From Chiloscyllium plagiosum (Eukaryota): a stretch of 64,000 bases of DNA. Below are positions 3,601-53,500 of this stretch, piece by piece. Numbering within the stretch: position 1 is the first letter of the stretch; every line of letters begins with the position of its first letter. The stretch is taken from NCBI RefSeq assembly GCF_004010195.1, contig NC_057721.1:44719240-44783239 (forward strand). Reading direction: 5' to 3'. A program made the translations under genes and the position numbers. The notes under the pieces were generated by a model, which was not told the DNA's origin, made no database searches, and saw only the letters and a list, made by a program, of their open reading frames with translations.

Positions 3601-3849
3601 AACATGTCTTGAATTTTTAGCCACCTTCCTGTGAATGGACTGGGATTTTTTTTGGAATATTTAATACATGTTTTCGAGCCCACAATATTCATCAATGGGC
3701 AGCTTAAGTTAAAAAGCAGAAATAATTAACATTTCAGATCTTACTTAACCAACTAGAATACTTAAGTTTTTGTTTTGGTTTTGAGATGTTGAATATACAT
3801 AGCACTTAGGAATTTGAATTAGATTTAGTTGTGTGCATATTATCCAAAA

Positions 3850-4289
3850 ATGTCGGAGAGTCAGGAAAATACCTTTGTACCAAGTTCAGCATCTCCAAGG
3901 AGCTGCAGGACGAAGTGTTCGATTTGTAAAAACCTGTACACTGATCCAAGGATCTTGCCTTGTCTTCATACGTTCTGCCTGGACTGTGTGAGTGGCTTAG
4001 AGCAGCTGTCCATTGCCAGGACTCAGAGGGAGGATGAGTCCTGGTCACTCGACTGCGCCGAGCCTAGGACCTGTATCCTGTGTCCAGTCTGTGACTGTGA
4101 AGTGAATGTACCTGCTGCTGGTCTGCGAGAACTGACCAGCAACCATCTCATTCAGAATGAAGTTTTCCTGGAAAGTCTGAGGAGACCTGACTACTGGCTA
4201 GTCTGTGATCTTTGTAACGATGGGAATGCTGAAACAAGGTGTCACATCTGCTCAACAAATCTCTGTGACTTCTGCTCTAAAGCACACAG
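3850..4289 (+). CDS. TRIM45: TRIM45 coding exon 1 (RING finger, start of B-box 1)
   Basis: ATG at 3850. RING CSIC...PCLHTFCLDC...CPVC and B-box CDLC...CHICSTNLCDFCSKAH. Donor AG|GTAAAA at 4289/4290, phase 2. Confidence 0.95.
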
Positions 4290-4351
4290 GTAAAACCCAG
4301 CTCTTTGGGGATGTTATCGGTTTCTGTTAAAGTTTTGTTTAATTCGATTCC

Positions 4352-8353: not shown

Positions 8354-9090
8354 GAGGCAGAAGATGACTGCTTCTCACAATACAGTGGCGCTAACGGACC
8401 TACAAGGTGGAAATGAGAGAGTCAATAAGTCCATCATGTGCTCTGCTCATCCTGCAGAGGAGCTGAGGCTGTTTTGTGAGACATGTGATCGTTTGGTATG
8501 CAGGGATTGTTGTGTGGTGGATCACCGTGATCATAACTGTGATTTTGTCATGAGTGTCATTAACAAACATGGTGGCTTCATCAGGCAACTTCTGAAGCAA
8601 ACACAACCACATATTGCTGGATTGCAGGAGACTTTGCAAAGGATTGCAGATACGAGGCAGCTGGTGCAAAAGCGACTGAGAACTGTAACTGAAGAAATCA
8701 ATCAGTTTACAGAGGATTATATCAGGGCAATGGAGAAACATCGGAGCAGGCTTTTGAAAGAACTGGAAGAGCTGAGGATCCAGAAGGAGAACTCCCTGAA
8801 TCTTCAGCAGATCCAGTTACAACAGATCCTGGCAGATATGAAGACTGGAGTGGATTTCACTGAGCACTTGCTCACCAGTGGCTCTCCTGTGGAAATCCTC
8901 CTGACCAAACCTGTGGTAGTCAACCGTTTGAAGCTGCTGAATAAGACAAGTTACAGCACTCACCCCAGAGAGGATGATGGAATACAATTCCAGCAACAGG
9001 AGAAAGCGGTACAGTGTGACGGATTTGAGGTATTCGGAATCATTGTCACAAAGACACTTGATCCCAGCAAGTGTCTCCTTCAGGGTGAAG
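8354..9090 (+). CDS. TRIM45: TRIM45 coding exon 2 (end of B-box 1, B-box 2, coiled coil)
   Basis: Acceptor CCCCCTGCAG|G restores HRRQKMTASH across the junction. B-box 2 CSAHPAEELRLFCETCDRLVCRDCCVVDHRDH, then a long coiled coil. Donor G|GTAAGT at 9090/9091, phase 1. Confidence 0.96.
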
Positions 9091-9439
9091 GTAAGTGAGA
9101 GAAAGATGATCACAACTTTTCAAGTGTGGAATTCCTTTTAAAAGTGTTTGAAATATTCTTCCTCTTCAAATGGATTTGGGTGCAGTGTGAGAATTGGGGA
9201 TCACGTTACAAACTTCAGTGTGAGGTTGTGGCCAAGTGGAATGGTGGAAGTGCTAAATATGAAATAAGGACCATCCATTCGGATGTCTAGCAAATAAAGC
9301 ATTGAGAAAGCCTGTGATAAAGAAAGTAGGTAATGCTGTTGGTTCCAGGGTGGTAACATGCTGCTCGTGTTATGAAGGTAAGTCAAGGCCACGTCTGTTT
9401 TCCAGGTTTGCTTAGCACTATAACGAATGGGTGAAAAAA

Positions 9440-18315: not shown

Positions 18316-19515
18316 GTGAGCGATTTAACTGTACCGTAAATTACTGCCTGACAAAATGTAGCACGAATACTGCATAAAGTGAGTTAAGTTTGGGTTACTG
18401 AACAGCACATCCAACCCTTGGAGGAACTCTGAGGGATCCCCATGTACATCTCCTGTCTAGTTTGGAAAATTTACTGTCCAGCCATTGCACAATCTAGGCC
18501 AACGTTCTTGTATGTACTGTAGCTTACTTACCAAAGGCGCAAATCACAGATAATCCCTCAAAATGCTTCTGCTCCTGAATCCTTTGAAAACAAATTCATT
18601 GACTTTAAATGGTCAAAGTTATTTCAAGATTGTTCCTAAATCTTTAGAGTAGTTTTGAAAAAAAAAATTGCTTACCTTCCTAAACATTCCCCATAGACTA
18701 AATTTAATTATCCGCCTATGCTGATTGTACTGGCTATTCACAAAATACTTGCACTATTGGTTGATCTCATTCCAGTCTTATTTTCTTCTTCAAGCTGTTC
18801 TTGTACGTAATAATGAAGCTTTTAAAGCAAAAGAGAAACAATGCTTTCATCTCCTTTCAATGACTTGCTGTTTTCTCTGGATGTTTCTATAGATTCCTTT
18901 GTAGGAACAAGAGAAATGCAGCATTGCTACATGGGCAAAAAGGCCAAGACCCCAATTCAACTCCCACTGTTCTGATCTTGATACAATCCATGACATAATG
19001 ATGGAGTTGATGATTAATCATGACAGCTAGTTTCTATCAATTACACTATAACAGGTCCGGACCGGAGGTCAAAAAGTCTCTAGTGGAAAAACTTTCTCAA
19101 AATAAGTCCAAAGTCACCTAATTTTCTCCCAACTATGTGTGCATAATGTATGCCATGCTCCACATTACTCCTATTATGTGGGGCTTCAATGATTGAATAT
19201 ACTGATGCATTTAATTAATATAACCTTACAATTTATTGTTGGGTTATTCTGAGAAATATTGAACTGAAGTTCAAAATTCTTAAGAAATATTCCATCTTGA
19301 ATATTAAAATAGACCAGTTGCTTACATTACATTTCAGTAATGGAATGTGAGTAATCCAGATATTAGTGAAGTCATGTGGTTTCCTCTTTATTTTTCATTT
19401 TGTGCCCACCTATATTTGTATGCTTTTTAAAAGGAATATTCAATCCTAAAATAATTTAATAGTAATCCATTGTTTAACTGAATGGAAAATGGGTGAATAC
19501 TTCTATTTCATGCAG

Positions 19516-19630
19516 CAGTCTCAAGACAATACTGCACGACAATCATGATGGAACTTATCGATTTATGTACACTCCTCGAGTATCAGGCTTGTATGAGGGA
19601 TATGTCTGTGTGAAGGGACAGCATGTACAG
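19516..19630 (+). CDS. TRIM45: TRIM45 coding exon 4 (filamin repeat)
   Basis: TGCAG|CAGT...GTACAG|GTGAGT, 115 nt, phase 2 to 0. Encodes SLKTILHDNHDGTYRFMYTPRVSGLYEGYVCVKGQHVQ (DNxDGTY..YTP filamin signature). Confidence 0.94.
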
Positions 19631-20249
19631 GTGAGTGAACAAAGGATGGAGGTCACAAGAGTGTATGTTGTCTTGGCTCTTCATATCTTTTGGATCCTGG
19701 CTTGAATACAACCTTTTCAGAGAGAGTTTAAAATAGTTCCTCTGTGTCTCTAAGTGAGTGTTGTGGTTGCATCTGACCACCTAAATATACTTGCGTCTGG
19801 AAGGCATGCACATGATCATGTAAAATATACACTTCTGATATACTGTACACTTTACTCAAAAAATGCCCCTAGAATATTTAAGTAGAAGCATTGTTGTTTT
19901 GTGGTTCATTTTATGGTGTGGAGAGTGAAATATAAGGTGTTTCTTTGTTCTTATGTGGATTATTTTATTGATCTGTTTCACAGCATTGCAATCTTTGCAG
20001 TAAGTTCTCTCTTCCCATTTTTAAAAAATCAGTACATGTTGATCAAATGTTGATTTGATGTCAAAGGCATTTATATTTTTCTCACCTCTTGGGTTCAGCT
20101 GTGTTCGAGTTTGAGCTGAGTGGCCCTGATAAAACCTAAACTTGGAGTCACTATCGGGTTATTGCAATGTCAGTACAACTTGATGGCACTGTCATTGACA
20201 CTTTTCATCAGATTGTCGATGACAGAGGTAAGTTAAATGGATTGTTGAA

Positions 20250-27257: not shown

Positions 27258-28533
27258 TCTCGGCTTTGTGCATGGGAAATCATGTCTTAACTTGATTGAA
27301 TTTTTTGAGGAAGTAACACAGAGGATTGATAAGGGCAGAGCAGTAGATGTGATCTATATGGACTTCAGTTAGGTGTTCGACAAGGTTCCCCATGGGAGAC
27401 TGGTTATGAAGGTTGAATCTCACAGAATACAGGGAGAACTAGCCATTTGAATGCAGAACTAGATCAAAGGTAGAAGACAAAGGGTGGTGGTGGAGGGTTG
27501 TTTTTCAGACTGGAGGCCTGTGACCAGTGGAGGGCCACCAGGATCGGTGCTGGGTCCTCTACTTTTTGTTATTTACATCAATGATTTGGATGCGAGCATA
27601 AGAGGTACAGTTAGTAAGTTTACAAGTGACACCGAAATTGGAGGTGAAGTGGACAGCGAAGAGGGTAACCTTAGATTACAACAGGATCTTGACCAGATGG
27701 GCCAATGGGCTGAGAAGTGGCAAATGGAGTTTAATTCAGATAAATACGAGGTTGCGTTTTGGGAAAGCAAATCTTAGCAGGACTAATACACTTAATGGTA
27801 AGGTCCTAGGGAGTGGCGCTGAATAAAGAGACCTTGGAGTGCAAGTTCATAGCTCCTTGAAAGTGGAGTCGCAGGTAGATAGGAAACTGAAGAAGGCGTT
27901 TTGTATGCTTTCCTTTATTGGTCAGAGTATTGAGTACAGGACTTGGGAGGTCATGATGCGGCTGTACAGGACATTGGTTAGACTACTGTTGGAATATTGC
28001 ATGCAATTCTGGTCTCCTTCCTATTGGAAGGATGTTGCGAAACTTGAAAGGGTTCAGAAAAGATTTACAAGGACGTTGCCAGGGTTGGAGGATTTCAGCT
28101 ACAGGGAGAGGCTGAAAAGGCTGGGGCTGTTTTCCCTGGAGCGTCGGAGGCTGAGGGGTGACCTTTTGGAGGTTTACAAAATTATGAGGAGCATGGATAG
28201 GATAAATAGGCAAAGTCTTTTCCCTGGGGTCGGGGAGTCCAGAACTAGAGGGCATAGGTTTAGGGTGAGAGGGGAAAGATATAAAAGAGACCTAAGGGGC
28301 AACTTTTTCACGCAGAGGGTGATACGTGTATGGAATGAGCTGCCAGAGGAAGTGGTGGAGGTTGGTACAATTGCAACATTTAAGAGGCATTTGGATGGGT
28401 ATATGAATAGGAAGGGTGTGGAGGGATATGGGCCGGATGCTGGCAGGTGGGACCAGATTGGGTTGGCATATCTGGTCGGCATTGACGGGTTGGACCGAAG
28501 GGTCTGTTTCCGTTCTGTATGTCTCTATGACTG
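27258..28533 (+). mobile_element. Relatively young 5'-truncated CR1 (HER1-like) LINE inserted in the PLE 3' UTR
   Basis: RT motifs PVTSG.P.GSVLGPLLFVIYINDLD, LEYCMQFWSP, GLFSLERRRLRGDL. Short direct repeat TAAAT at 27253-27257 and 28534-28538. PLE sequence resumes afterwards. Confidence 0.9.
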
Positions 28534-28584
28534 TAAATAGAAAGCAGGAGTTTTCAGCAGTGCTTCGCCTGAGGCCCACTGAAG

Positions 28585-28903
28585 ATTAGATTAGATTACA
28601 TTACAGTGTGGGAACAGGCCCTTCGGCCCAACAAGTCCACACCCACCCGCCGAAGCGAAACCCACCAACACCCCTACATTTACCCCTTTTTAACCTAACA
28701 CTACGGGGAAATTTAGCATGGCCAATTCACCTGACCTGCACATCTTTGGACTGTGGGAGGAAACCGGAGCACCCGGAGGAAACCCACGCAGACACGGGGA
28801 GAATGTGCAAACTCCACACAGTCAGTCGCCTGAGTCGGGAATTGGACCCGGGTCTCTGGCGCTGTGAGGCAGCAGTGCTAACCACTGTGCCACCGTGCCA
28901 CCC
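28585..28903 (-). mobile_element. HE1-like V-SINE inserted in the PLE hammerhead core
   Basis: Full SINE on the minus strand with an (ATTAG)n tail. GAAGAT is duplicated at 28581-28586 and 28914-28919. Confidence 0.9.
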
Positions 28904-35379: not shown

Positions 35380-35697
35380 GGGCGGCACGGTGGCACAGTG
35401 GTTAGCACTGCTGCCTCACAGCGCCAGAGACCCGGGTTCAATATCCGCCTCAGACGACTGACTGTGTGGAGTTTGTACGTTCTCCCCGTGTCTGCGTGGG
35501 TTTCCTCCGGGTGCTCCGGTTTCCTCCCACGGTCCAAAGATGTGCAGGGTCAGGTGAATTGGCCATGCTAAATTGCCCGTAGTGTTAGGTAAGGGATAAA
35601 TGTAGGGATATGGGTGGGTTGCGCTTCGGCGGGGCGGTGTGGACTTGTTGGGCCGAAGGGCCTGTTTCCACACTCTAAGTAATCTAATCTAATCTAA
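35380..35697 (+). mobile_element. HE1-like V-SINE, full length, CpG-rich (young)
   Basis: GGGCGGCACGGTGGCACAGTGGTTAGC head, V core, (TAATC)n tail. Confidence 0.92.
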
Positions 35698-35911: not shown

Positions 35912-36228
35912 ATTAGATTACTTACAGGGTGGAAACAGGCCCTTCGGCCCAACAAGTCCACACTGACCTGCCGAAGCGCAACCCACCCATACCCCTACCC
36001 CTACATTTACCCCTTTAACCTAACACTATGGGCAATTTAGCGTGGCCAATTCACCTGACCCTGCACATCTTTGGACTGTGGGAGGAAACCGGAGCACCCG
36101 GAGGAAACCCACGCAGACACGGGGAGAATGTGCAAACTCCACACAGTCAGTCGCCTGAGTCGGGAATTGAACCCGGGTCTCTGGCGCTGTGAGGCAGCAG
36201 TGCTAACCACTGTGCCACCGTGCCGCCC
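35912..36228 (-). mobile_element. HE1-like V-SINE, full length, young
   Basis: Reverse complement of the 35380 copy. Confidence 0.92.
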
Positions 36229-41429: not shown

Positions 41430-41495
41430 AGAGGAAATGAAATTAATGCAACATTGTTGGACAGTGACGTTGGTTCAGCAAAAATGTGTGGTTGT
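41430..41495 (+). promoter_or_regulatory. Putative leukocyte-type promoter of the IgSF gene
   Basis: GGAAATGAAA (ETS-IRF composite GGAAnnGAAA) at 41433-41442, TGACGT (CRE-like) at 41465-41470 and TGTGGTT (RUNX) at 41487-41493. All lie within 90 nt of the ATG. Confidence 0.5.
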
Positions 41496-41516
41496 TTTTG
41501 TCACTGTGACCAAGGC

Positions 41517-41553
41517 ATGATGTTGACTGTTATGTTGCTTGTGTTTTCAGTCA
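41517..41553 (+). CDS. Leader (signal peptide) exon of a V-J-type IgSF receptor gene
   Basis: Encodes MMLTVMLLVFSV plus 1 nt, donor A|GTGAGT, phase 1. A 116-nt intron follows, ending TAATAG at 41669. Confidence 0.85.
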
Positions 41554-41669
41554 GTGAGTACATCAATTTTACTTTTAAGTAACATGCATGATTAATCATT
41601 TCGTATTGTGGCAGTCTTATTAGAATGGATCAAGTTTTTTTTACTATCTACAAAATTGTGTTGTAATAG

Positions 41670-42020
41670 GTGCTGCCACTGAACTGGAGCTGCTACAATC
41701 TCCCTCATCACTGAGGCTGCAGGAAGCCCATTCTGCCCGTTTCTCTTGCCTTCTACAACACAATGGCAATGCAGTGAATGGCAGTTTCTATTGGCATCAC
41801 ATTGAAATAACATTTAGTGAATCGCAAGTGAGAAATGTCAGTACTGAGGAAGATGGTCGTATCACTTTCTTCAGTAGCAACGTGCCTAGTTTCCACAGCG
41901 TATTGATCATTGAAGACGTTCGTTATGCTGACAGCGGTTTGTATTATTGTAACATGGCCATTCATGGAGGTTCACATCCAAGAAAGATCACTGGCACTGG
42001 GACTCGCCTAATTATTCAAG
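41670..42020 (+). CDS. Germline-joined V-J-type Ig domain exon, NKp30/NCR3-like
   Basis: 351 nt, phase 1-1, open. Encodes SAATELELLQSPSSLRLQEAHSARFSCLLQHNGNAVNGSFYWHHIEITFSESQVRNVSTEEDGRITFFSSNVPSFHSVLIIEDVRYADSGLYYCNMAIHGGSHPRKITGTGTRLIIQ. Canonical C, W (C+15), DSGLYYC (C+67) and J-like GTGTRL. Donor G|GTAAGG. Confidence 0.9.
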
Positions 42021-42439
42021 GTAAGGGAAAATACCTCGATGAAACTCCCTACAAGTTTGGGTTAGGCATTGAATTGGCCTCTAAAAAAGCACATTTTGTA
42101 CAGCTGAAAGTCCTACATGCCTCACTTGTTCTGTTTATGACCTATTAACATAAGAATGTGAGAAAGTCTGTAATCAAGCCATAAAGAGCTCCCTCCAGGC
42201 TGTTCTGACAGCGGTGTGGAACATACTCCACTGTCTGGTGTTCTGCCCAGTAGCGTCAGTTGAACAATCCTTTTTCAACACAAAAACGGATATTGTTGGC
42301 GAATCTGCACGTCTGGCAGTATCTGTGAGAGGATAGCAGAGTTAACGTTTCGAATCCAGTTACTTCCTCAGAACTCGTCCTTTTCTACTAGTCAACCATT
42401 CCCAGTGAATGGCTCGGCCTCGAATTTCACTTCGAACTT

Positions 42440-43462: not shown

Positions 43463-45923
43463 CACCGGCATCTCCAAATCATTCGAATTTAACTGAGAGC
43501 CTTTTTTAATAAAATGTTTTAAGCGTCCTGTTATAATACACCGCTGAAGTGGGTGAGACTTGAATCTAGGTGAAGCTCAAGTCACACTGTCACCAGACCA
43601 CAAGAACCCAAAATAGCCAGTGATATTGTATTCACATATAGGTGACAAAACAGCCACAAAACTGAGCACAGAAAGGCATTTAGCGACCAACTTTGGGGAA
43701 ATTATATTAGATGTAAGATTTAATTGTACACGCCATAATGCATTCCTTCTTAGAATTTCTACAACATTAAAGCGCAATTAAATTATAACAGCAGCAAATG
43801 TCCTTTGGTTGCTATTTCAGAAATATACGCTGTTACAATAATACTCAATGGTGGAAAGATTGCAGAAGTACAGAAGACCATCAGTTCTCTTTCTCTGCAG
43901 GAGCAGCGCAGCCTTCCCCATGCCTGTACCCCTGCAGTATTTTTTAACCCTCCCACAAAGTGATTATCTAAATACCTTTGGAAATTTGCTAACTTTTCAG
44001 AAAGTTTTCCTCTGGTCCCCACAATTTTGGCAATGGAAACTATCTCGATTCTGGACCCCTCACGATGTTTCACACCTATCAAAATTCCTTTCAATCTTCT
44101 CTTTAAGGAGAACAATACCAGGACCCCAGGTAAATTTTATGGGGATATGTATTCAAATCCCACCATAACAGATGGTCAAATTTGGATCAATAAAAATCTG
44201 AAATTTTAAAACAAGCCAACCTAATGATGAGTAATGGTGACTGTCAATTTTTGTAAATATCTGTTCAGTTCACTTATGTATTTTAGGGAAGGAAACTGCT
44301 GTCCTTATCTGATCTAGTATACATATGGTTCCAGACACAGAAATATGGTTAACTCTTAACTGCTCAGTGCTAATTAAGAATGGACAATAAATGCTGGCTG
44401 AGCCAGTTACATCCACATCCATAAATGAGCTAACAAAAAAAAGTCCCTTGGCATTCCACTAATGCAGCCTGGAACATGCACACACTTACTGCCAATGAAT
44501 GATGCACATTGTCCCTTGGTATTAATGCTGAGGAATCCTTTAACTCTATCACCACTTTATCACCCTTCTTCATGTTTTACCATCAAAAAGGTCGACTCAT
44601 AACCATGCCTTCAAGTGTCAGTATTTATACTATATTTGGAAAACATTATTACATGACAAAGCTGTAACAAGGAGAAAATGCAATTTCAATGCTCAGCCGA
44701 ATAGAGTAGTTTTTTCCTATTGGCTGATTCTATTTGGTCCACTCCTTGTAGACTGAAAGGAGGTGGAAGCATCCTGTTGACTCGTCTTAGCTGAGATGTC
44801 TGTGGTGGTTAACCTCATCATGGGTGGGGGATTGCCAGAGGAAACTGCTTTTGAATCATTGTAAGGCTAGCTTCCTCATCCTGGCTCTGCTGCACAGACG
44901 CAAAGGCAGTCACCTCACAAGGAATGCCACATGGTTTCTCCGTGGTTCTTGGTGTGCACTCTGATCTCTGGAGGGGAGTATCAGCAGGGGCCCAACTGAG
45001 ACCCTCTTGAAATATTAAGGTGCTGCCAATGCCATTGTCAATCTAGAAAACATGAGGCTGCATCCTGTGGACATCAGCACACAGTTCCTTTATGCATTGA
45101 AGGTGCTGTCACCAATGGCTCAATGTTGTAGGTGTACTAAATAAATGAATACAGGATTTCAGGAAAACAGGACAGCAATCATTTGTTTCAGACACATATG
45201 TGAAGGGAAAGCCTTAATACGAAGCTTCAAGCTCAGTCTGTTGGCTTACAGAAAATCTTCAAGCTTTATACAGATTAAGCACTTATATTACAATCCCCAC
45301 ACTTTAAGATCCAAATGTCCCATTTTATCTTTGTTTTCCATAATCTTTCATAGGCATTGTCTGTTTTTTCACCTAAGGCCTCTGAAAATATGGCTTCGAG
45401 CCACTAACTTTGATAGTCTGAACGCTTTTTTGTTCTTCATTGCTTTACACATCTGTAGTTCCCCCATGCTTTGCTAGCTTTGTGTATTACTGACTGACTG
45501 CATGGCTAAAGCTTAACTCATTTAATCCTTTCACTCACCATATGGTTCACCAGTCTTTCATTGGAGAGGCTTATACACACACAGCCCTGAGCCATAACCA
45601 TGCACATGAACTGGATGGATTCTTACACTTTCAGCTCATGATCCTGCACAGCCTTGGGATACTCAGACCAGTAACAGAAGTGTTTCTACATTACAAGGCA
45701 GAAGCTGCATTCCTAGGACTCCTGAGGCTCTACATCTGCATACCTCAGCAAAGCTATGTTTGTCCTCCCTCCTTTGGGGGGAATTGCCCACTTCTATGTC
45801 TGCAACATTCTGATGGCTGATTCATGCTCCTCACCCAAAGTCAGTGATCTAATTGCATATGAGAATTCACTAAGATGAATGCAAACATGTACAGATTAGG
45901 TGGATTGGCCATGCTAAATTGCC

Positions 45924-46509: not shown

Positions 46510-48123
46510 AAGGGCAGTCTGGGTGGGATGCTGAGAGTCAGTGCAGACTCAGTGAGCTGATTGACCTCTATCTGCACTGTTGGGATTCTGCGATTATATC
46601 TACAATGTACAGATCGTGCATTTGTAAGGTGTGATGATGAGTGTTTGCTGATCATGTTGGCTTATAGATAGAGAGGGAGAGGTGGACATTAGCACGTGTG
46701 TGTGAGAAGAAATCATGAAATTTAGCATTGGAGAGTAGATATCTCTCTTGGAATGAGGCTTTCCAAAGAAAATTGGTGTTTGGCGTGCAGCTGAGTATGT
46801 GGAGTACATTACAACTCCTAATAAGTGCAATGTCATTTATAATCTAATCTCTACTATGAGTGCGAATTTTTCCCTGACTGACATCTTCATGGTGTATGAC
46901 TCTGACTCATACTCCCTCTTCTTTTAAGGTAATGATATGAAGATAGGTTACCCTATACCTCTTTGGGTACTCTCTTACGTTTCTGCTCATGGACGAAAGA
47001 GAGCGTGACAGAGCACTGTCAGTGGCAGCTGCTCCAGTTCATTGGGGTACATGAATCAATGCTGGCACGTCCTCAGCAGCATTCTGAATGTGAGCCATTC
47101 TGAGCATTTAATAATGGCCGAGGCACATGGATTCTCCTGGTAAGGAGTTGCATGCACCCTCAGATTCCTCAGTGTCTGTCGGCTGCAGCAAAAATCCAGC
47201 CTCTATGTATTTCATTGTCCTGGGAGCTTTGGCTTTGATTGTCGTACCTTTCCTTGTCAGGAGGGATGTAGTTTCACCTTATGTGATCCATGCCCTTTTT
47301 ATATTAGTCCACTGTTCCTTTAAGGTTTTGCCTACCAATCTTCCACTACAATGTACTACTGTGTGGCACCTGATGTAATCTCATGATTACCATCTTTGAA
47401 CCTAGATTGTCCTCCTTGGAGAAGGTTGAGAGGAGATGTGATAGAAGTTTTCAAGTCAGGAGGGGCTGAATAGGGTTGAGAGGCAGAAACTGTTTCCATT
47501 GACAAAATAACCGAGAATTAAAGAACATTTAAGGTGAATGGTTAAAAAAAAAGTAGAGTTTAGTGCGGAGTTATTCTTATAGTGAGTGGGGAGGAATTGA
47601 ATGCATTGCTTGAAATGGTGGAAACATATTCAATCATGGCTTATATAAAAGAATTGACAAGTAACTCAAAAGAAAAAAGTTCACAGCTACAGAAAAAGAC
47701 CAGAAATTTGCAGTGAGACAGCCTGGATACAAAGATCTCCTGTGCTGTAACCAATCTATGATTTAGTATTGATTTTGATATTCATTGTCCTACTTTTACA
47801 ATTTAACTTAAAATAATATATCAAATATATAATTTTAATGATAAATGACCATAAAAACTCTACTAAGGTCTCCCCTTACATGTTCTTTTCCCTGGCTAGA
47901 AATCAAAGCCTTTCCCAGTATTGCCTCAAATCCAGAATCCAGTTTCTAAAGATTAGCATCCTGGTTGTTTGTTGCATGTGGCATTTAGTACTTGATCCTC
48001 TCTCTTGTGCTTCTGCAACAAAGATTACACACAGTAGTTAATTTGTCATCTCACAATTACTTTGCACTGTTGGTCATGACTCCCTCTAACATATATTCTA
48101 ATGTTTGGGATGTATAGGTCATA

Positions 48124-50719: not shown

Positions 50720-53500
50720 TATACAAGATTGAATTTCTACCTTAACATCACTTCCCACTCTATTGTCATACTTCTTAGTTATATCCTTTGATTCTGCTTG
50801 TGCTTTAAGACTATTGATCTTGGCCTTAAGCAAACTAATAGACCAAGCATCCATAGTCCTCTGGGATTTAAAAAAATTCCAACTATGTGATCTTTCAATA
50901 CCTCAATCTTAAATCTTATCCTGAAATTATCAGCCTTAGTCATAGCCTCTCTAGGCAGTGGAAAGAACTCTCCTTTCACTCTGTCCGGCTCTCTAAGACA
51001 TTTAAACATTTCAATGTGAATACATCTTTTCTAAACTTTGGAGGATATAGGCCAATTTTACATGCTTTTTCCTCAGGGAACCGTTTTCATTCAGAATTCA
51101 GCCTAGTACATGCACTATGCAACACCTCCAAGGTAACTAACATCCTCGCTTAAGTAAGGACACAAAGAAACATCAAAAATAGGAGGAGGAGTCAGCCATT
51201 CAGCCCTCTCAGCCTGCTGCACGAGTCAATATATTCATGGCTGATCGTCAAACACAGTACCCTGTCCTGATTTCTCCCCATAACCTTTGATCCCTTTAGC
51301 CACTAGAACTATATCTGTCAAGTTTTTGAAAACATTCAGTGGTTTGACCTCAACTGCTTTCTGTAGCAGATCAGTCCACAAGCTCACTAGTTTCTCCTCA
51401 ATGCAAGGCACTGTACAATTGAAGGAAGACATCCTTGCTCCTCTACTCAAATCCTCCCACTATGAAGACTAACAATAACATTCCCTTTCTTCACTGCCTG
51501 CTCCACCTGCATGCTTATTTTCAGTGACTGTTCTACAGGATACCCAGATCTCCCTGCACCTCCCCCTTTCCTAATCTATCACCATTCAGATGGTAATCTG
51601 CCTTACTGTTTTTACGACCAAAAAGGATAACCTCACATTTATCCATATTATATTGCATCTACCACACATTTACCCACTGACTCACTTATCCAAATCATAC
51701 TGAAGCATCTGCTTACAGCTCATCTTCCCACCCAGTTTTGTGCTCTCTCCAAACTTGGAGATATTCCATTTGGTTCCCTCATCTAATCATTAATATACAT
51801 TCGTGAATAGCTGGGGTCCAAGCACCGATCCCATTCGATACTGCCTGCCAGTTGGAAAAAGACCTGTTTATTCCTACACTCTGTACCCTGTCTGGCAGCT
51901 CATTCTCTATTCATGCCAGTGCATCATCCCCAATCCCACTTTAATTTTGCATGCAAATCTCTTCTATAGTACCTAATTGAAAACCTTCTGGAAGTCCAAG
52001 TAAACCATATCCACTGACACCCCCACATGATCCCTATTAGTCACATCCACAAAAAATTCTAGTGGATTTGTCAAGCATGATTTCCCTTTTGTAAATCCAT
52101 GCTGAATCTGTCCAGTCTTGTCACTGTTTTTCATTTTGTTATTAAGTGTTCTGCGATTAAATCTTTAATAAGGGACTGTAGCAATCTCAAGTGAACCAGC
52201 CTATACTTCCCTGTTTTCCCTTTAGTTCTTTATTTTAAATAGTTGGGTTACATTGGGTCTCCTCCAATCTGTAGGAACTTTTCCAGAGCCTATAGAAGCT
52301 TGAAAGATGACCACCAATGCACCCATTATTTTTACAGCCACTTCCTTAAATACTATGCGATATAGATTAATCAGGCCTGGAGATTTATTGGCCTGTACTC
52401 CCAGTAATTTCTCCAACACTATTTCCCTATTAACATTGATTTCCTTCAGTTCCTCCCTCTCACTAGACCCTGTTTTCCCCAACATTTTTGTCATGTTATT
52501 TATGTCCTTTGTGAAGACAGAACCAAAGCATGTTTTCAACTGGTCTACCATTTCTCTATGCACAGTACACTAGATGCAGTTTTGTCAAAACCCTATCATC
52601 AAGAAAAGTGACCATCATCCCAGAGGACTGCTCTCTGATTACAGATCAACAATTGGTGGTGGTTTAATCTGAGGGTCACCACAGCTCAGGCAAGGGGGTG
52701 AGCTTGTGAAGGCAGGACCTTCGAGTTAAGCCCACCTGGTGTGGGAATGGAACCAACTCTGTTTGTATCACTCAGTATCACAAACCAGCTAACTAGCTGT
52801 ATTTTTTTTGTTGTCTTTCTTGCTCTAGTTCAATTATTCCTGCCTGTAAATTGATTGATCTGAATAGACTGAAAATGTGTTGCTGGAAAAGCGCAGCAGG
52901 TCAGGCAGCATCCAAGGAGCAGGAGAATCAACGTTTCGGGCATGAGCCCTTCTTCAGGAAGCAGGGCTCATGCCTGAAACGTCGATTCTCCTGATCCTTG
53001 GGTGCTGCCTGACCTGCTGCGCTTTTCCAGCAACACATTTTCAGCTCTGATCTCCAGCATCTGCAGTCCTCACTTTCTCCTGATCTGAATAGACTGTAGG
53101 TCTAGACATCCCAAGTGCAAAATCACCAGAGACTGCCTGGTTATGCATTAAAAATGGGAAATACAAACATAGGCACATAGAAAATAGGAGCAGGAATAGG
53201 CCCTTCTGCCCTTCAGGTCTACTCTGCCAGTCAATACGATGGTGATTAATCAGTACCCTTTTTCCACTTTCACCAGTTGTCCTTTCATTCTGAGAACTAC
53301 ACCTAACTTCTTTTTGAAAACATTCACTCTTTTAGCCTCAACTGATACTTGTGGGAGAGAATTCCATACACTTACCATCCTCTGGGTGAAGGAATTCCTC
53401 CACATCTCAGTCCTAAATGCGCTACCTTGTATCCTTAAACTGTGACCTTTGGTTCTGGACTCCCTGGGCATCCAGAACATCCTCCCTGCATTTGACCTGA
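50720..53500 (-). mobile_element. Cluster of degraded CR1 LINE fragments (~50720-51160, ~51170-52560, ~53165-53500)
   Basis: Minus-strand ORFs ANKSPGLINLYRIVFKEVA..KVPTDWR and ESRTKGHSLRI...NSFTQRMVSVWNSLP. Confidence 0.75.
52872..53080. mobile_element. Fold-back PLE-tail insertion
   Basis: Near-perfect inverted arms. Direct repeat TGATCTGAATAGACTG at 52856-52871 and 53081-53096. Confidence 0.85.

What the first reader, a model, noticed from the sequence alone, without database searches (positions are those of the whole stretch)
41517..42020. Unannotated non-rearranging V-J immunoglobulin receptor gene (NKp30-like) beside TRIM45
Seen: a phase-1 leader exon, a 116-nt intron and an intact 117-codon V exon that already contains a J-like G strand (KITGTGTRLIIQ), with no recombination signal inside or after it. 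Known: germline-joined VJ domains define NKp30/NCR3, the CD28/CTLA4 family and proposed antigen-receptor precursors. By eye against recalled human NKp30, NGSFYW aligns to IGSVTW, QVRNVSTEEDGRI to EVRNGTPEFRGRL (shared N-glycan site), LIIEDVRYADSGLYYC to LHIRDVRGHDASIYVC and TGTGTRLII to TGNGTRLVV. Inference: a cartilaginous-fish NKp30-type receptor outside the MHC, at a position where I recall no such gene next to mammalian TRIM45.
Basis: partly seen in the sequence, partly recalled or inferred. Interest (0 to 1): 0.85.

Follow-up and report, generated by a model that had tools for sequence, protein, structure and literature searches.

The report
Shark germline-joined VJ receptor gene
A bamboo-shark gene next to TRIM45 encodes one antibody-like variable domain that is already joined in the germline, so it is a real but not unannotated innate-type immune receptor gene whose exact family and membrane anchor remain open.

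Summary
The leader exon is 41517-41553, the intron is 116 nt, and the intact V exon is 41670-42020, ending KITGTGTRLIIQ before a GT donor. No 12- or 23-spacer recombination signal lies in or after it.

The gene is real. It matches Pfam V-set at 4e-9, folds as a V domain (pLDDT 90), and has a 50%-identical counterpart in Mustelus asterias.

It is not unannotated. NCBI lists it as XP_043556870.1, "CD8 beta chain-like", in Chiloscyllium plagiosum.

"NKp30-like" describes its grade; membership is not shown. Human NKp30 scores E 3e-6, but TCR-alpha V domains score better. Amphibian and shark VJ receptors score the same as an NKp30 orthologue, and the 12-domain tree is unresolved. The neighbour is TRIM45, not the MHC.

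The 3' end is unresolved. NCBI's last exon has no membrane anchor and partly overlaps a decayed repeat. The Mustelus protein has a membrane segment carrying an arginine.

The scan's first readers noted several other NKp30-like VJ genes elsewhere in this genome. I did not check those notes.

The parts
41517..41553 (+). Leader exon. It encodes MMLTVMLLVFSV plus the first base of a split Ser codon (phase 1), with donor GTGAGT. NCBI's model starts at the third in-frame ATG (MLLVFSVS).
41554..41669 (+). Short leader intron, 116 nt, GT...AG.
41670..42020 (+). Germline-joined VJ exon (V-set Ig domain). It has 116 whole codons (41672-42019), Cys26, Trp41, YYC93, two N-glycosylation sequons (NGS at residue 36, NVS at 55) and a J-like G strand TGTGTRLIIQ. 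It ends in phase 1 with donor GTAAGG. There is no RSS.
43821..43963 (+). Third and last coding exon of NCBI model XP_043556870.1 (EIYAVTIILNGG...NPPTK, then stop). The acceptor is good and AATAAA lies at 44189. There is no hydrophobic segment (best 17-residue Kyte-Doolittle mean 0.98). Its 3' part lies antisense over a decayed LINE-like reading frame, so it is probably not the ancestral C-terminus.
47164..47267 (+). Unproven candidate stalk-plus-membrane exon (DSSVSVGCSKNPASMYFIVLGALALIVVPFLVRRD). It is the strongest hydrophobic stretch downstream (mean 2.53). A CAG acceptor puts it in frame with the phase-1 end of the V exon. The donor is weak (GTAGTT), the membrane segment is uncharged, and it has no homologue or Pfam hit.

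Best explanation
This is a genuine gene for a single-domain immune receptor of the germline-joined VJ kind, kept in at least two orders of galeomorph sharks. NKp30, CD8, CD79, SIRP and NITR belong to the same kind. It lies between TRIM45 and, according to unchecked scan notes, a B7-H4-like gene.

Shown: a split leader, a short leader intron and one exon encoding a complete V domain whose G strand already carries the J-like GxGTxL motif. No recombination is needed or possible.

Inferred mechanism:
- The domain is displayed on, or released from, a leukocyte.
- It binds a conserved, non-polymorphic ligand through its CDR1-like and FG (CDR3-like) loops. These are the best conserved parts between bamboo shark and Mustelus.
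- The Mustelus protein continues into a stalk and a membrane segment carrying an arginine, followed by a four-residue tail. That is the architecture of an activating receptor that signals through an ITAM adaptor.
- In the bamboo shark the only annotated 3' exon has no membrane anchor and partly overlaps decayed repeat sequence. Either the product there is soluble, or the true anchor exon has not been found.

By descent it is its own shark lineage. It resembles NKp30 in grade, but it is not shown to be an NCR3 family member, and it is not CD8 beta.
For: - Exon anatomy and splice sites are intact.
- Pfam V-set matches at 4.1e-09.
- AlphaFold model from 12 VJ domains: pLDDT 90.1, pTM 0.83, with the G strand split at the GxG bulge.
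- Structural neighbours are V domains: skate IgNAR V at Z 16.2, TCR V at Z 15, CD79b at 14.6, CD8 beta at 14.0.
- Of 1.84 billion representative proteins, 77 match at E<=1e-3. Only one besides the gene's own product is close: Mustelus asterias XP_078088791.1, E 5e-28, 50% identity.
- The next best single domains reach only 38 bits against 113.
- Identity to Mustelus by region: 12 of 17 across Cys26-His42, 11 of 17 across YYC plus the FG loop, 8 of 20 and 10 of 28 in the C'-to-E part, 56 of 111 overall. Both N-glycosylation sequons are shared.
- The Mustelus tail has a 17-residue window of mean hydropathy 2.58 (VVRYILFVLLMCYFILV). The bamboo-shark tail reaches 0.98.
- No RSS.
- No constant-domain exon was detected in the window. 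All 109 tblastn alignments of the 77 hits fall on the V exon, except P0001's own exon 3. Of 18 stop-free stretches of 80 or more codons downstream, 10 were scanned against Pfam and none has an Ig domain.
Against: - There is no expression evidence.
- The membrane exon was not found in the window. The Mustelus tail has no significant match downstream: best score 41 against 31-47 for 30 shuffles, and that match lies in a SINE.
- The two proteins' tails are unrelated: 1760 of 2000 shuffles score as well.
- Only two species have an annotated copy. Proteomes of the close relatives Hemiscyllium ocellatum and Chiloscyllium punctatum are in the database, yet they gave no hit within the length limits.
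- The Mustelus model may itself be incomplete.
- Conservation of the loops rests on a single pair of sequences.
Confidence: 0.6

Rival explanations
1. It is a true member of the NKp30/NCR3 family: a paralogue left on the chromosome-1-type MHC paralogous region by the early genome duplications, working like NKp30 (activating, with a B7-family ligand).
For: - Human NKp30 is the best non-rearranging hit among solved structures (E 3.2e-06).
- The window's VRNVSTEEDGRI aligns with human NKp30's VRNGTPEFRGRL, with the N-glycosylation sequon in the same column.
- The J-like strand TGTGTRLII aligns with TGNGTRLVV.
- The Mustelus orthologue has an arginine in its membrane segment, as I recall NKp30 does.
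- Scan notes place a B7-H4-like gene about 11 kb past the window's end (unchecked).
Against: - Identity to an NKp30 orthologue is 30%, no higher than to skate, frog or caecilian VJ receptors at 32-34%.
- Single-domain scores tie at 35.9 against 36-38 bits.
- TCR-alpha V domains score higher in both searches of solved structures.
- NKp30 is not among the 50 best structural matches in either search.
- In the tree, 8 of 9 inner branches are unresolved.
- The locus is not beside AIF1/LST1. A scan note places another VJ gene next to AIF1 on another piece of this genome (unchecked).
Confidence: 0.2
2. In the bamboo shark the gene is a decaying or truncated relic. The V exon is still open, but the anchor exon is lost, and transcripts, if any, end in repeat-derived sequence and give no working receptor.
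For: - NCBI's terminal exon has no hydrophobic segment.
- Its 3' part and its 3' UTR lie antisense over a frame with collinear similarity to a LINE-like ORF elsewhere in the window (E 0.005 and 0.056).
- No counterpart of the Mustelus membrane exon was found.
- No RNA holder is on record.
- No hit came from the closest relatives' proteomes.
Against: - The leader, both splice sites of the leader intron, the V exon's donor and all 116 codons are intact, with every canonical V-domain residue.
- By my own arithmetic, a random 116-codon frame stays open about 0.4% of the time.
- A 306-N run 0.74 kb after the V exon and a 500-N run further on could hide an exon.
- A frame-compatible membrane-like candidate exists at 47164-47267.
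Confidence: 0.15
3. It is a CD8 beta homologue, as the NCBI name says.
For: - Mouse CD8 beta (3b9k_B) aligns structurally at Z 14.0 with 31% identity over 102 residues.
- A CD8 beta chain appears at E 2.7e-04.
- CD8 beta is also a VJ-type domain, as listed in the passage I read in PMC11599192.
Against: - CD8 beta ranks 60th of the 60 matches shown and is absent from the 60 shown.
- Neither tail shows the Pro/Thr-rich composition I recall for the CD8 beta hinge (direct reading).
- No second V exon (a CD8A partner) is in the window.
- The neighbour is TRIM45.
Confidence: 0.03
4. It is a germline-joined copy of a rearranging TCR or Ig light-chain V gene. From recalled knowledge, sharks have such pre-joined clusters.
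For: The best matches among solved structures are rearranged TCR-alpha V-J domains, aligned through the J motif. The split leader and short leader intron are typical of antigen-receptor V genes.
Against: - No constant-domain exon was found downstream.
- No protein among 1.84 billion representatives other than the Mustelus orthologue exceeds 39 bits for a single domain. It is therefore not a recent derivative of any annotated V gene.
- The locus is TRIM45, not an antigen-receptor locus.
- The arrangement is shared by two shark orders.
Confidence: 0.02

Closest known systems
NKp30 / NCR3 (natural cytotoxicity triggering receptor 3)
   Same: It has a single germline-joined VJ domain on one exon. 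The N-glycosylation sequon and the E..GR motif fall in the same alignment columns, and the J-like strand is GxGTRL(I/V)(I/V). The Mustelus orthologue has a membrane segment with an arginine.
   Different: Identity is only 30%, and no tree or score places it with NCR3 ahead of other VJ families. It sits beside TRIM45 rather than in the MHC class III region. No basic-residue membrane exon was found in the bamboo-shark window.
CD8 beta chain (the name NCBI gives the gene)
   Same: VJ-type V domain. Structural alignment gives Z 14.0 with 31% identity.
   Different: The sequence score is weaker than for TCR-alpha and NKp30. The tails lack the hinge composition I recall for CD8 beta, there is no CD8A neighbour, and the genomic region is different.
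Rearranged TCR V-alpha-J and shark IgNAR V domains
   Same: These give the highest sequence scores (TCR-alpha, E 1.6e-07 and 8e-08) and the highest structural scores (IgNAR V Z 16.2, rmsd 1.6 over 103 residues). The split leader and short leader intron are also shared.
   Different: There is no RSS, the J is fused in the germline, no C exon follows, and it is not in an antigen-receptor locus.
UrIg / UrIg2 (non-rearranging shark VJ-C1 genes, PMC12227049)
   Same: A non-rearranging VJ exon with a split leader in a shark, discussed there as a relic of the antigen-receptor precursor (passages read).
   Different: UrIg and UrIg2 carry three to eleven C1 domains and lie in the MHC or next to the IgH/TCR-alpha-delta cluster. 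Here no C1 exon was found, and the neighbour is TRIM45.
SIRP-like and amphibian VJ(-C1) receptors with ITIM tails (P0053 Rhinatrema, P0016 Leptobrachium)
   Same: These are the best non-orthologous single-domain scores (38.4 and 36.2 bits), at 32-33% identity, with the same TG.GT.L.V G strand.
   Different: Those proteins have C1 domains and long ITIM-bearing tails. This gene has a single Ig exon.
CD28/CTLA4 family (nine members, PMC11599192)
   Same: [quoted passage not shown]
   Different: The FG loop NMAIHGGSHPRKI has none of the family's EIP or PPP motifs. None of the synteny blocks in the section I read includes TRIM45 or VTCN1, and those words do not occur in the main text.

Membership tests
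NKp30/NCR3 | Single V-type Ig domain with the J segment fused in the germline, on one exon | tested here: met
NKp30/NCR3 | Sequence groups with NCR3 orthologues rather than with other VJ families | tested here: inconclusive
   NKp30 scores E 3.2e-06 against TCR-alpha at 1.6e-07, and 5.8e-05 against 8e-08 with the two-shark profile. The NKp30 orthologue reaches 35.9 bits against 36-38 for other VJ receptors. The tree of 12 domains is a star. No shark or Xenopus NCR3 sequence was available.
NKp30/NCR3 | Stalk plus membrane segment with a basic residue for an ITAM adaptor (feature recalled) | tested here: inconclusive
   Not found in the window. Present in the Mustelus orthologue.
NKp30/NCR3 | Location in the MHC class III region beside AIF1/LST1 (recalled) | tested here: not met
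   The upstream neighbour is TRIM45. A scan note puts a different VJ gene beside AIF1 (unchecked).
NKp30/NCR3 | Binds B7H6 | not testable with these tools
   Needs a binding assay.
CD8 beta | Best sequence relative is CD8B | tested here: not met
   E 2.7e-04, last of the 60 matches shown. Absent from the 60 shown.
CD8 beta | Hinge, membrane segment and adjacent CD8A gene (recalled) | tested here: not met
   No second V exon in the window. The annotated tail has no membrane segment.
Rearranging Ig/TCR V gene segment | RSS (heptamer, 12 or 23 spacer, nonamer) at the 3' end of V, with a separate J | tested here: not met
   No match in or after the V exon at up to 3 mismatches. The J-like strand is in the same exon.
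Germline-joined Ig/TCR cluster, UrIg/UrIg2, SIRP | VJ exon followed by one or more C1-set exons | tested here: not met
   No further Ig exon by tblastn of 77 Ig proteins. Of 18 stop-free stretches, 10 were scanned and 0 had an Ig domain. Two N runs remain unread.
CD28/CTLA4 family | FG-loop motifs (EIP or PPP) and the family's synteny blocks | tested here: not met
   FG loop read directly against the motifs and synteny markers in PMC11599192 section 16. TRIM45 and VTCN1 occur 0 times in its main text. Its supplementary data sheets could not be seen.

The most novel reading that the evidence does not exclude
The gene may be the shark survivor of an old receptor-ligand pair. In this reading an activating, NKp30-grade VJ receptor stayed genetically linked to B7-H4 (VTCN1) on the chromosome-1-type MHC paralogous region, as I recall NKp30 and B7H6 are linked in the Xenopus MHC.

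If so, it would point to the kind of receptor that mammalian B7-H4 has lost or that still awaits discovery. A 2021 review states that no specific B7-H4 receptor has been recognised (passage read in PMC8509619).

It would also add a third chromosomal home for non-rearranging VJ genes, besides the MHC and the antigen-receptor complex.
Probability: 0.07. Interest if true: 0.8.

Novelty: new member of a known kind. Interest (0 to 1): 0.45.

Why it matters
Germline-joined VJ domains are the nearest living models of the gene that the RAG transposon split to create antibodies and T-cell receptors. Their chromosomal homes are used to reconstruct the proto-MHC (passages read in PMC12227049 and PMC10751288).

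A conserved shark VJ gene between TRIM45 and a B7-H4-like gene adds a locus outside the MHC and the antigen-receptor complex. Its activating-type counterpart in Mustelus gives a testable candidate partner for a B7-family ligand.

It also shows that automatic names for such genes mislead. Here the name is "CD8 beta chain-like".

Tried and rejected
**Anchor exon**
- tblastn of the Mustelus protein against the window found only the V exon.
- A local-alignment scan of the Mustelus tail over the downstream + frames gave a best score of 41, inside the shuffle range of 31-47. That match lies in a tRNA-derived SINE, so I rejected it.
- The hydropathy scan gave 17 windows. Most are repeat-derived or AT-rich: the GCCLTGC motif recurs at four places, and 47754 lies at the end of a LINE copy.
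- Only 47164-47267 was kept, as an unproven candidate.

**Tails**
- The tails of the two sharks' proteins are unrelated.
- blastn of the exon-3 region against the rest of the window found no repeat copy covering the exon. The repeat origin therefore rests on weak protein similarity only.

**Structure and family placement**
- The first structure model, from 2 sequences, failed (pLDDT 43.9) and was replaced.
- The ESM Atlas gave only generic V-set clusters.
- The 12-domain tree resolved nothing beyond the shark pair. Rows were one domain each from 12 of the 77 hits, chosen for full-length domain matches. The other 65 were left out, and no named CD8B, CD79, CD28, TCR or IgL reference was available.

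**Literature**
- The searches turned up no paper describing a VJ gene at TRIM45/VTCN1.
- Flajnik 2012 and Ohta 2015 are not held.
- Supplements are closed, so the gene tables of PMC11599192 and PMC12227049 were not seen.

**Unused tools**
- I left the third homologous-protein search unused, because its length limits would not reach a model containing the candidate exon.
Each exon was translated or searched alone, and the joined step was left out. P0001, NCBI's own spliced model as returned by the tool, was used as it stands.
Full report
**What is there**

On the + strand an ATG at 41517 opens a 37-nt leader exon. It encodes MMLTVMLLVFSV plus one base and ends at a GTGAGT donor. A 116-nt intron ends in AG at 41669.

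A 351-nt exon (41670-42020) then encodes 116 whole codons without a stop:

AATELELLQSPSSLRLQEAHSARFSCLLQHNGNAVNGSFYWHHIEITFSESQVRNVSTEEDGRITFFSSNVPSFHSVLIIEDVRYADSGLYYCNMAIHGGSHPRKITGTGTRLIIQ

It is followed by a GTAAGG donor in phase 1.

The peptide matches Pfam V-set at E 4.1e-09 over profile positions 1-108 of 109.

Scans for a recombination signal allowed up to 3 mismatches. The 12-spacer scan gave 4 matches against 0.96 expected. The 23-spacer scan gave 6 against 1.15 expected. None lies in or just after the V exon. Three of the six 23-spacer matches are identical copies of one repeat. So the V and J parts are fused in the germline and cannot rearrange.

**Whose genome, and is it annotated?**

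The V-exon peptide is 100% identical to P0001. That is NCBI XP_043556870.1, "T-cell surface glycoprotein CD8 beta chain-like", from Chiloscyllium plagiosum, 171 aa, on an 88-Mb contig. It was the 1 significant protein among 5 candidates. The gene is therefore annotated, under a name taken from a weak best hit.

The NCBI model starts at the third in-frame ATG. It adds a third exon at 43821-43963.

**Neighbourhood**

Upstream on the same strand lie three kinds of exon:
- RING plus B-box at 3829-4293.
- B-box plus coiled coil at 8364-9098.
- A filamin-type exon at 19493-19702, whose best solved relative is the filamin domain of human TRIM45 (2DS4, E 2.1e-09).

This architecture identifies TRIM45.

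Unchecked first-reader notes of this scan place three genes past the window's end:
- a B7-H4-like gene about 11 kb past;
- a VJ-C1 receptor with an ITIM tail about 38 kb past;
- another NKp30-like VJ gene about 74 kb past.

The notes also mention several more NKp30-like VJ genes on other pieces, one of them beside AIF1. I could not read any of that DNA.

**Relatives**

HMMER against 1.84 billion representatives gave 77 proteins at E<=1e-3, 13 at <=1e-10 and 1 at <=1e-30. Most of the strong totals come from proteins with many V domains.

Best single-domain scores:

| Protein | Source | Bits |
|---|---|---|
| P0002 | Mustelus asterias XP_078088791.1, LOC144506486, 171 aa | 113 |
| P0053 | caecilian VJ-C1 receptor | 38.4 |
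| P0058 | catshark single-V protein | 37.9 |
| P0016 | frog receptor | 36.2 |
| P0070 | NKp30 orthologue | 35.9 |
| P0072 | SIRP-like protein | 27.9 |

P0002 is 50% identical to the V exon. P0070 matches human NKp30 at 2.2e-37, which is why I treat it as an NKp30 orthologue.

A word-based search with the two-shark alignment found only the two shark proteins among 559 candidates. Proteomes of Hemiscyllium ocellatum, Chiloscyllium punctatum, Heterodontus, Scyliorhinus and others are in the database. The gene is therefore rarely annotated. A model outside the length limits would have been missed, though.

**Family placement**

- Solved structures, V exon as query: TCR-alpha V-J domains lead at E 1.6e-07, NKp30 follows at 3.2e-06, and CD8 beta is last of the 60 shown at 2.7e-04.
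- Solved structures, two-shark profile as query: TCR-alpha is at 8e-08 and NKp30 at 5.8e-05.
- Alignment of 12 VJ domains (A3): identity to the window is 50% for Mustelus, 30% for the NKp30 orthologue and 23-34% for the others.
- Maximum-likelihood tree of those 12 rows: only the two sharks pair (support 82/91). Eight of nine inner branches are unresolved.
- Structure: the model built on A3 is confident (pLDDT 90.1, pTM 0.83) and is a V domain with the G strand broken at the GxG bulge.
- Structural neighbours: skate and shark IgNAR V (Z 16.2, rmsd 1.6, 103 residues), TCR V-beta and V-delta (15.1-15.2), antibody V, CD79b (14.6), CD8 beta (14.0, 31% identity), CD8 alpha and PD-1. These scores lie close together and do not discriminate. 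NKp30 is not among the 50 listed in either search.

VRNVSTEEDGRI aligns with VRNGTPEFRGRL with a shared sequon, and TGTGTRLII aligns with TGNGTRLVV. In the same alignment most of the other VJ domains also carry an N-x-S/T sequon at or next to that column, and several share the following E..GR motif. TCR-alpha has EDGRF at the corresponding place.

My reading is that NKp30 describes the grade of this receptor, and that its family by descent has not been shown.

It lacks the CD28-family FG-loop motifs and synteny markers. It also lacks the C1 exons of UrIg/UrIg2, SIRP or germline-joined Ig clusters.

**Conservation pattern**

Identity between bamboo shark and Mustelus by region:
- 12 of 17 from Cys26 to His42 (the CDR1-like loop and the start of strand C);
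- 11 of 17 in YYC plus the FG loop;
- 8 of 20 and 10 of 28 in the C'-to-E part;
- 56 of 111 overall.

Both sequons of the bamboo-shark domain are shared. With only one pair of sequences this is suggestive, no more. It fits a receptor that recognises a conserved ligand with the face that antigen receptors use.

**The 3' end**

The Mustelus protein continues after the V domain with a 21-residue stalk, a membrane segment containing an arginine (VVRYILFVLLMCYFILV, hydropathy mean 2.58) and four more residues. This is the layout of an activating receptor.

The bamboo-shark model instead ends in 47 residues without any hydrophobic segment (best mean 0.98). They are unrelated to the Mustelus tail: 1760 of 2000 shuffles score as well.

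That exon has a good acceptor and an AATAAA 226 nt after the stop. Its 3' part and its 3' UTR lie antisense over a frame with collinear, weak similarity to a LINE-like ORF elsewhere in the window (E 0.005 and 0.056). It looks like a lineage-specific, partly repeat-derived terminal exon.

No counterpart of the Mustelus membrane exon was found downstream.

The best hydrophobic candidate is 47164-47267 (DSSVSVGCSKNPASMYFIVLGALALIVVPFLVRRD). It is in frame with the V exon's phase through a CAG acceptor. Its donor is weak, and it has no homologue or Pfam hit.

A 306-N run begins 0.74 kb after the V exon, and a 500-N run lies further on. Either could hide an exon. I did not try to fill them.

**Expression**

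No listed run that holds the stretch is on record as RNA. Four runs of one organism hold 80-91% of its sampled words, intron included, which looks like DNA. Runs of three other organism labels hold 6-28%.

Expression, splice junctions and the synteny of the Mustelus gene therefore remain untested.

**Verdict**

- It is already annotated, under a misleading name.
- It is not demonstrably an NCR3 family member.
- Its membrane anchor in this species is missing or unfound.

I rate it a new member of a known kind, of moderate interest. The interest comes from its position in an MHC-paralogous neighbourhood next to a B7-H4-like gene. B7-H4's mammalian receptor was still unidentified according to the 2021 review passage read.

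**Papers seen**
- PMC12227049: outline and passages.
- PMC11599192: outline, section 16 and passages.
- PMC10751288: passages.
- PMC8509619 and PMC13560998: one passage each.
- All other papers: search listings only.

Noticed in passing
window 41493-41508 (- strand), 8 bp upstream of the leader ATG: A perfect RSS heptamer abuts a near-perfect nonamer with no spacer (CACAGTGACAAAAACA, 1 mismatch to the fused consensus). It is the only such site in 64 kb, against 0.08 expected; 8 of 100 shuffles had one. A zero spacer cannot serve RAG. It may be chance in A/T-rich DNA, but its position at the start of a VJ gene is odd.
   Followed up: partly
window 43915-44115 (- strand): A decayed LINE-like reading frame (FSLKRRLKG..., FQRYLDNHF...) is collinear with the ORF at 27839-28537. 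It lies antisense under the 3' end and the 3' UTR of NCBI's last exon.
   Followed up: partly
window 47164-47267 (+): A stalk-plus-membrane-like open stretch with a cysteine and an RRD stop-transfer lies in frame with the V exon through a CAG acceptor. Nothing supports it beyond hydropathy and phase.
   Followed up: partly
window 28851-28889 (-), 35394-35432 (+), 36176-36214 (-): Three identical RSS-like 23-spacer matches (CACAGTGGTTAGCACTGCTGCCTCACAGCGCCAGAGACC) are copies of one interspersed repeat. They explain most of the excess over chance.
   Followed up: no
window 52640-52850 (+): A tRNA-derived SINE-like element has a tail that translates to ITNQLTS plus a hydrophobic run. It mimics the Mustelus stalk and membrane sequence, and I rejected it as chance.
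   Followed up: yes
window 3829-4293, 8364-9098, 19493-19702 (+): TRIM45 exons (RING/B-box, B-box/coiled coil, filamin) are spread over at least 16 kb, with many LINE and SINE copies in the introns and in the 20 kb before the VJ gene.
   Followed up: partly
sequencing runs X1-X5: Runs of three other coded organism labels hold 6-28% of the sampled 31-mers of 41500-42030. This suggests near-identical sequence in related species. Whether those runs are RNA or DNA is only guessed by the tool.
   Followed up: no
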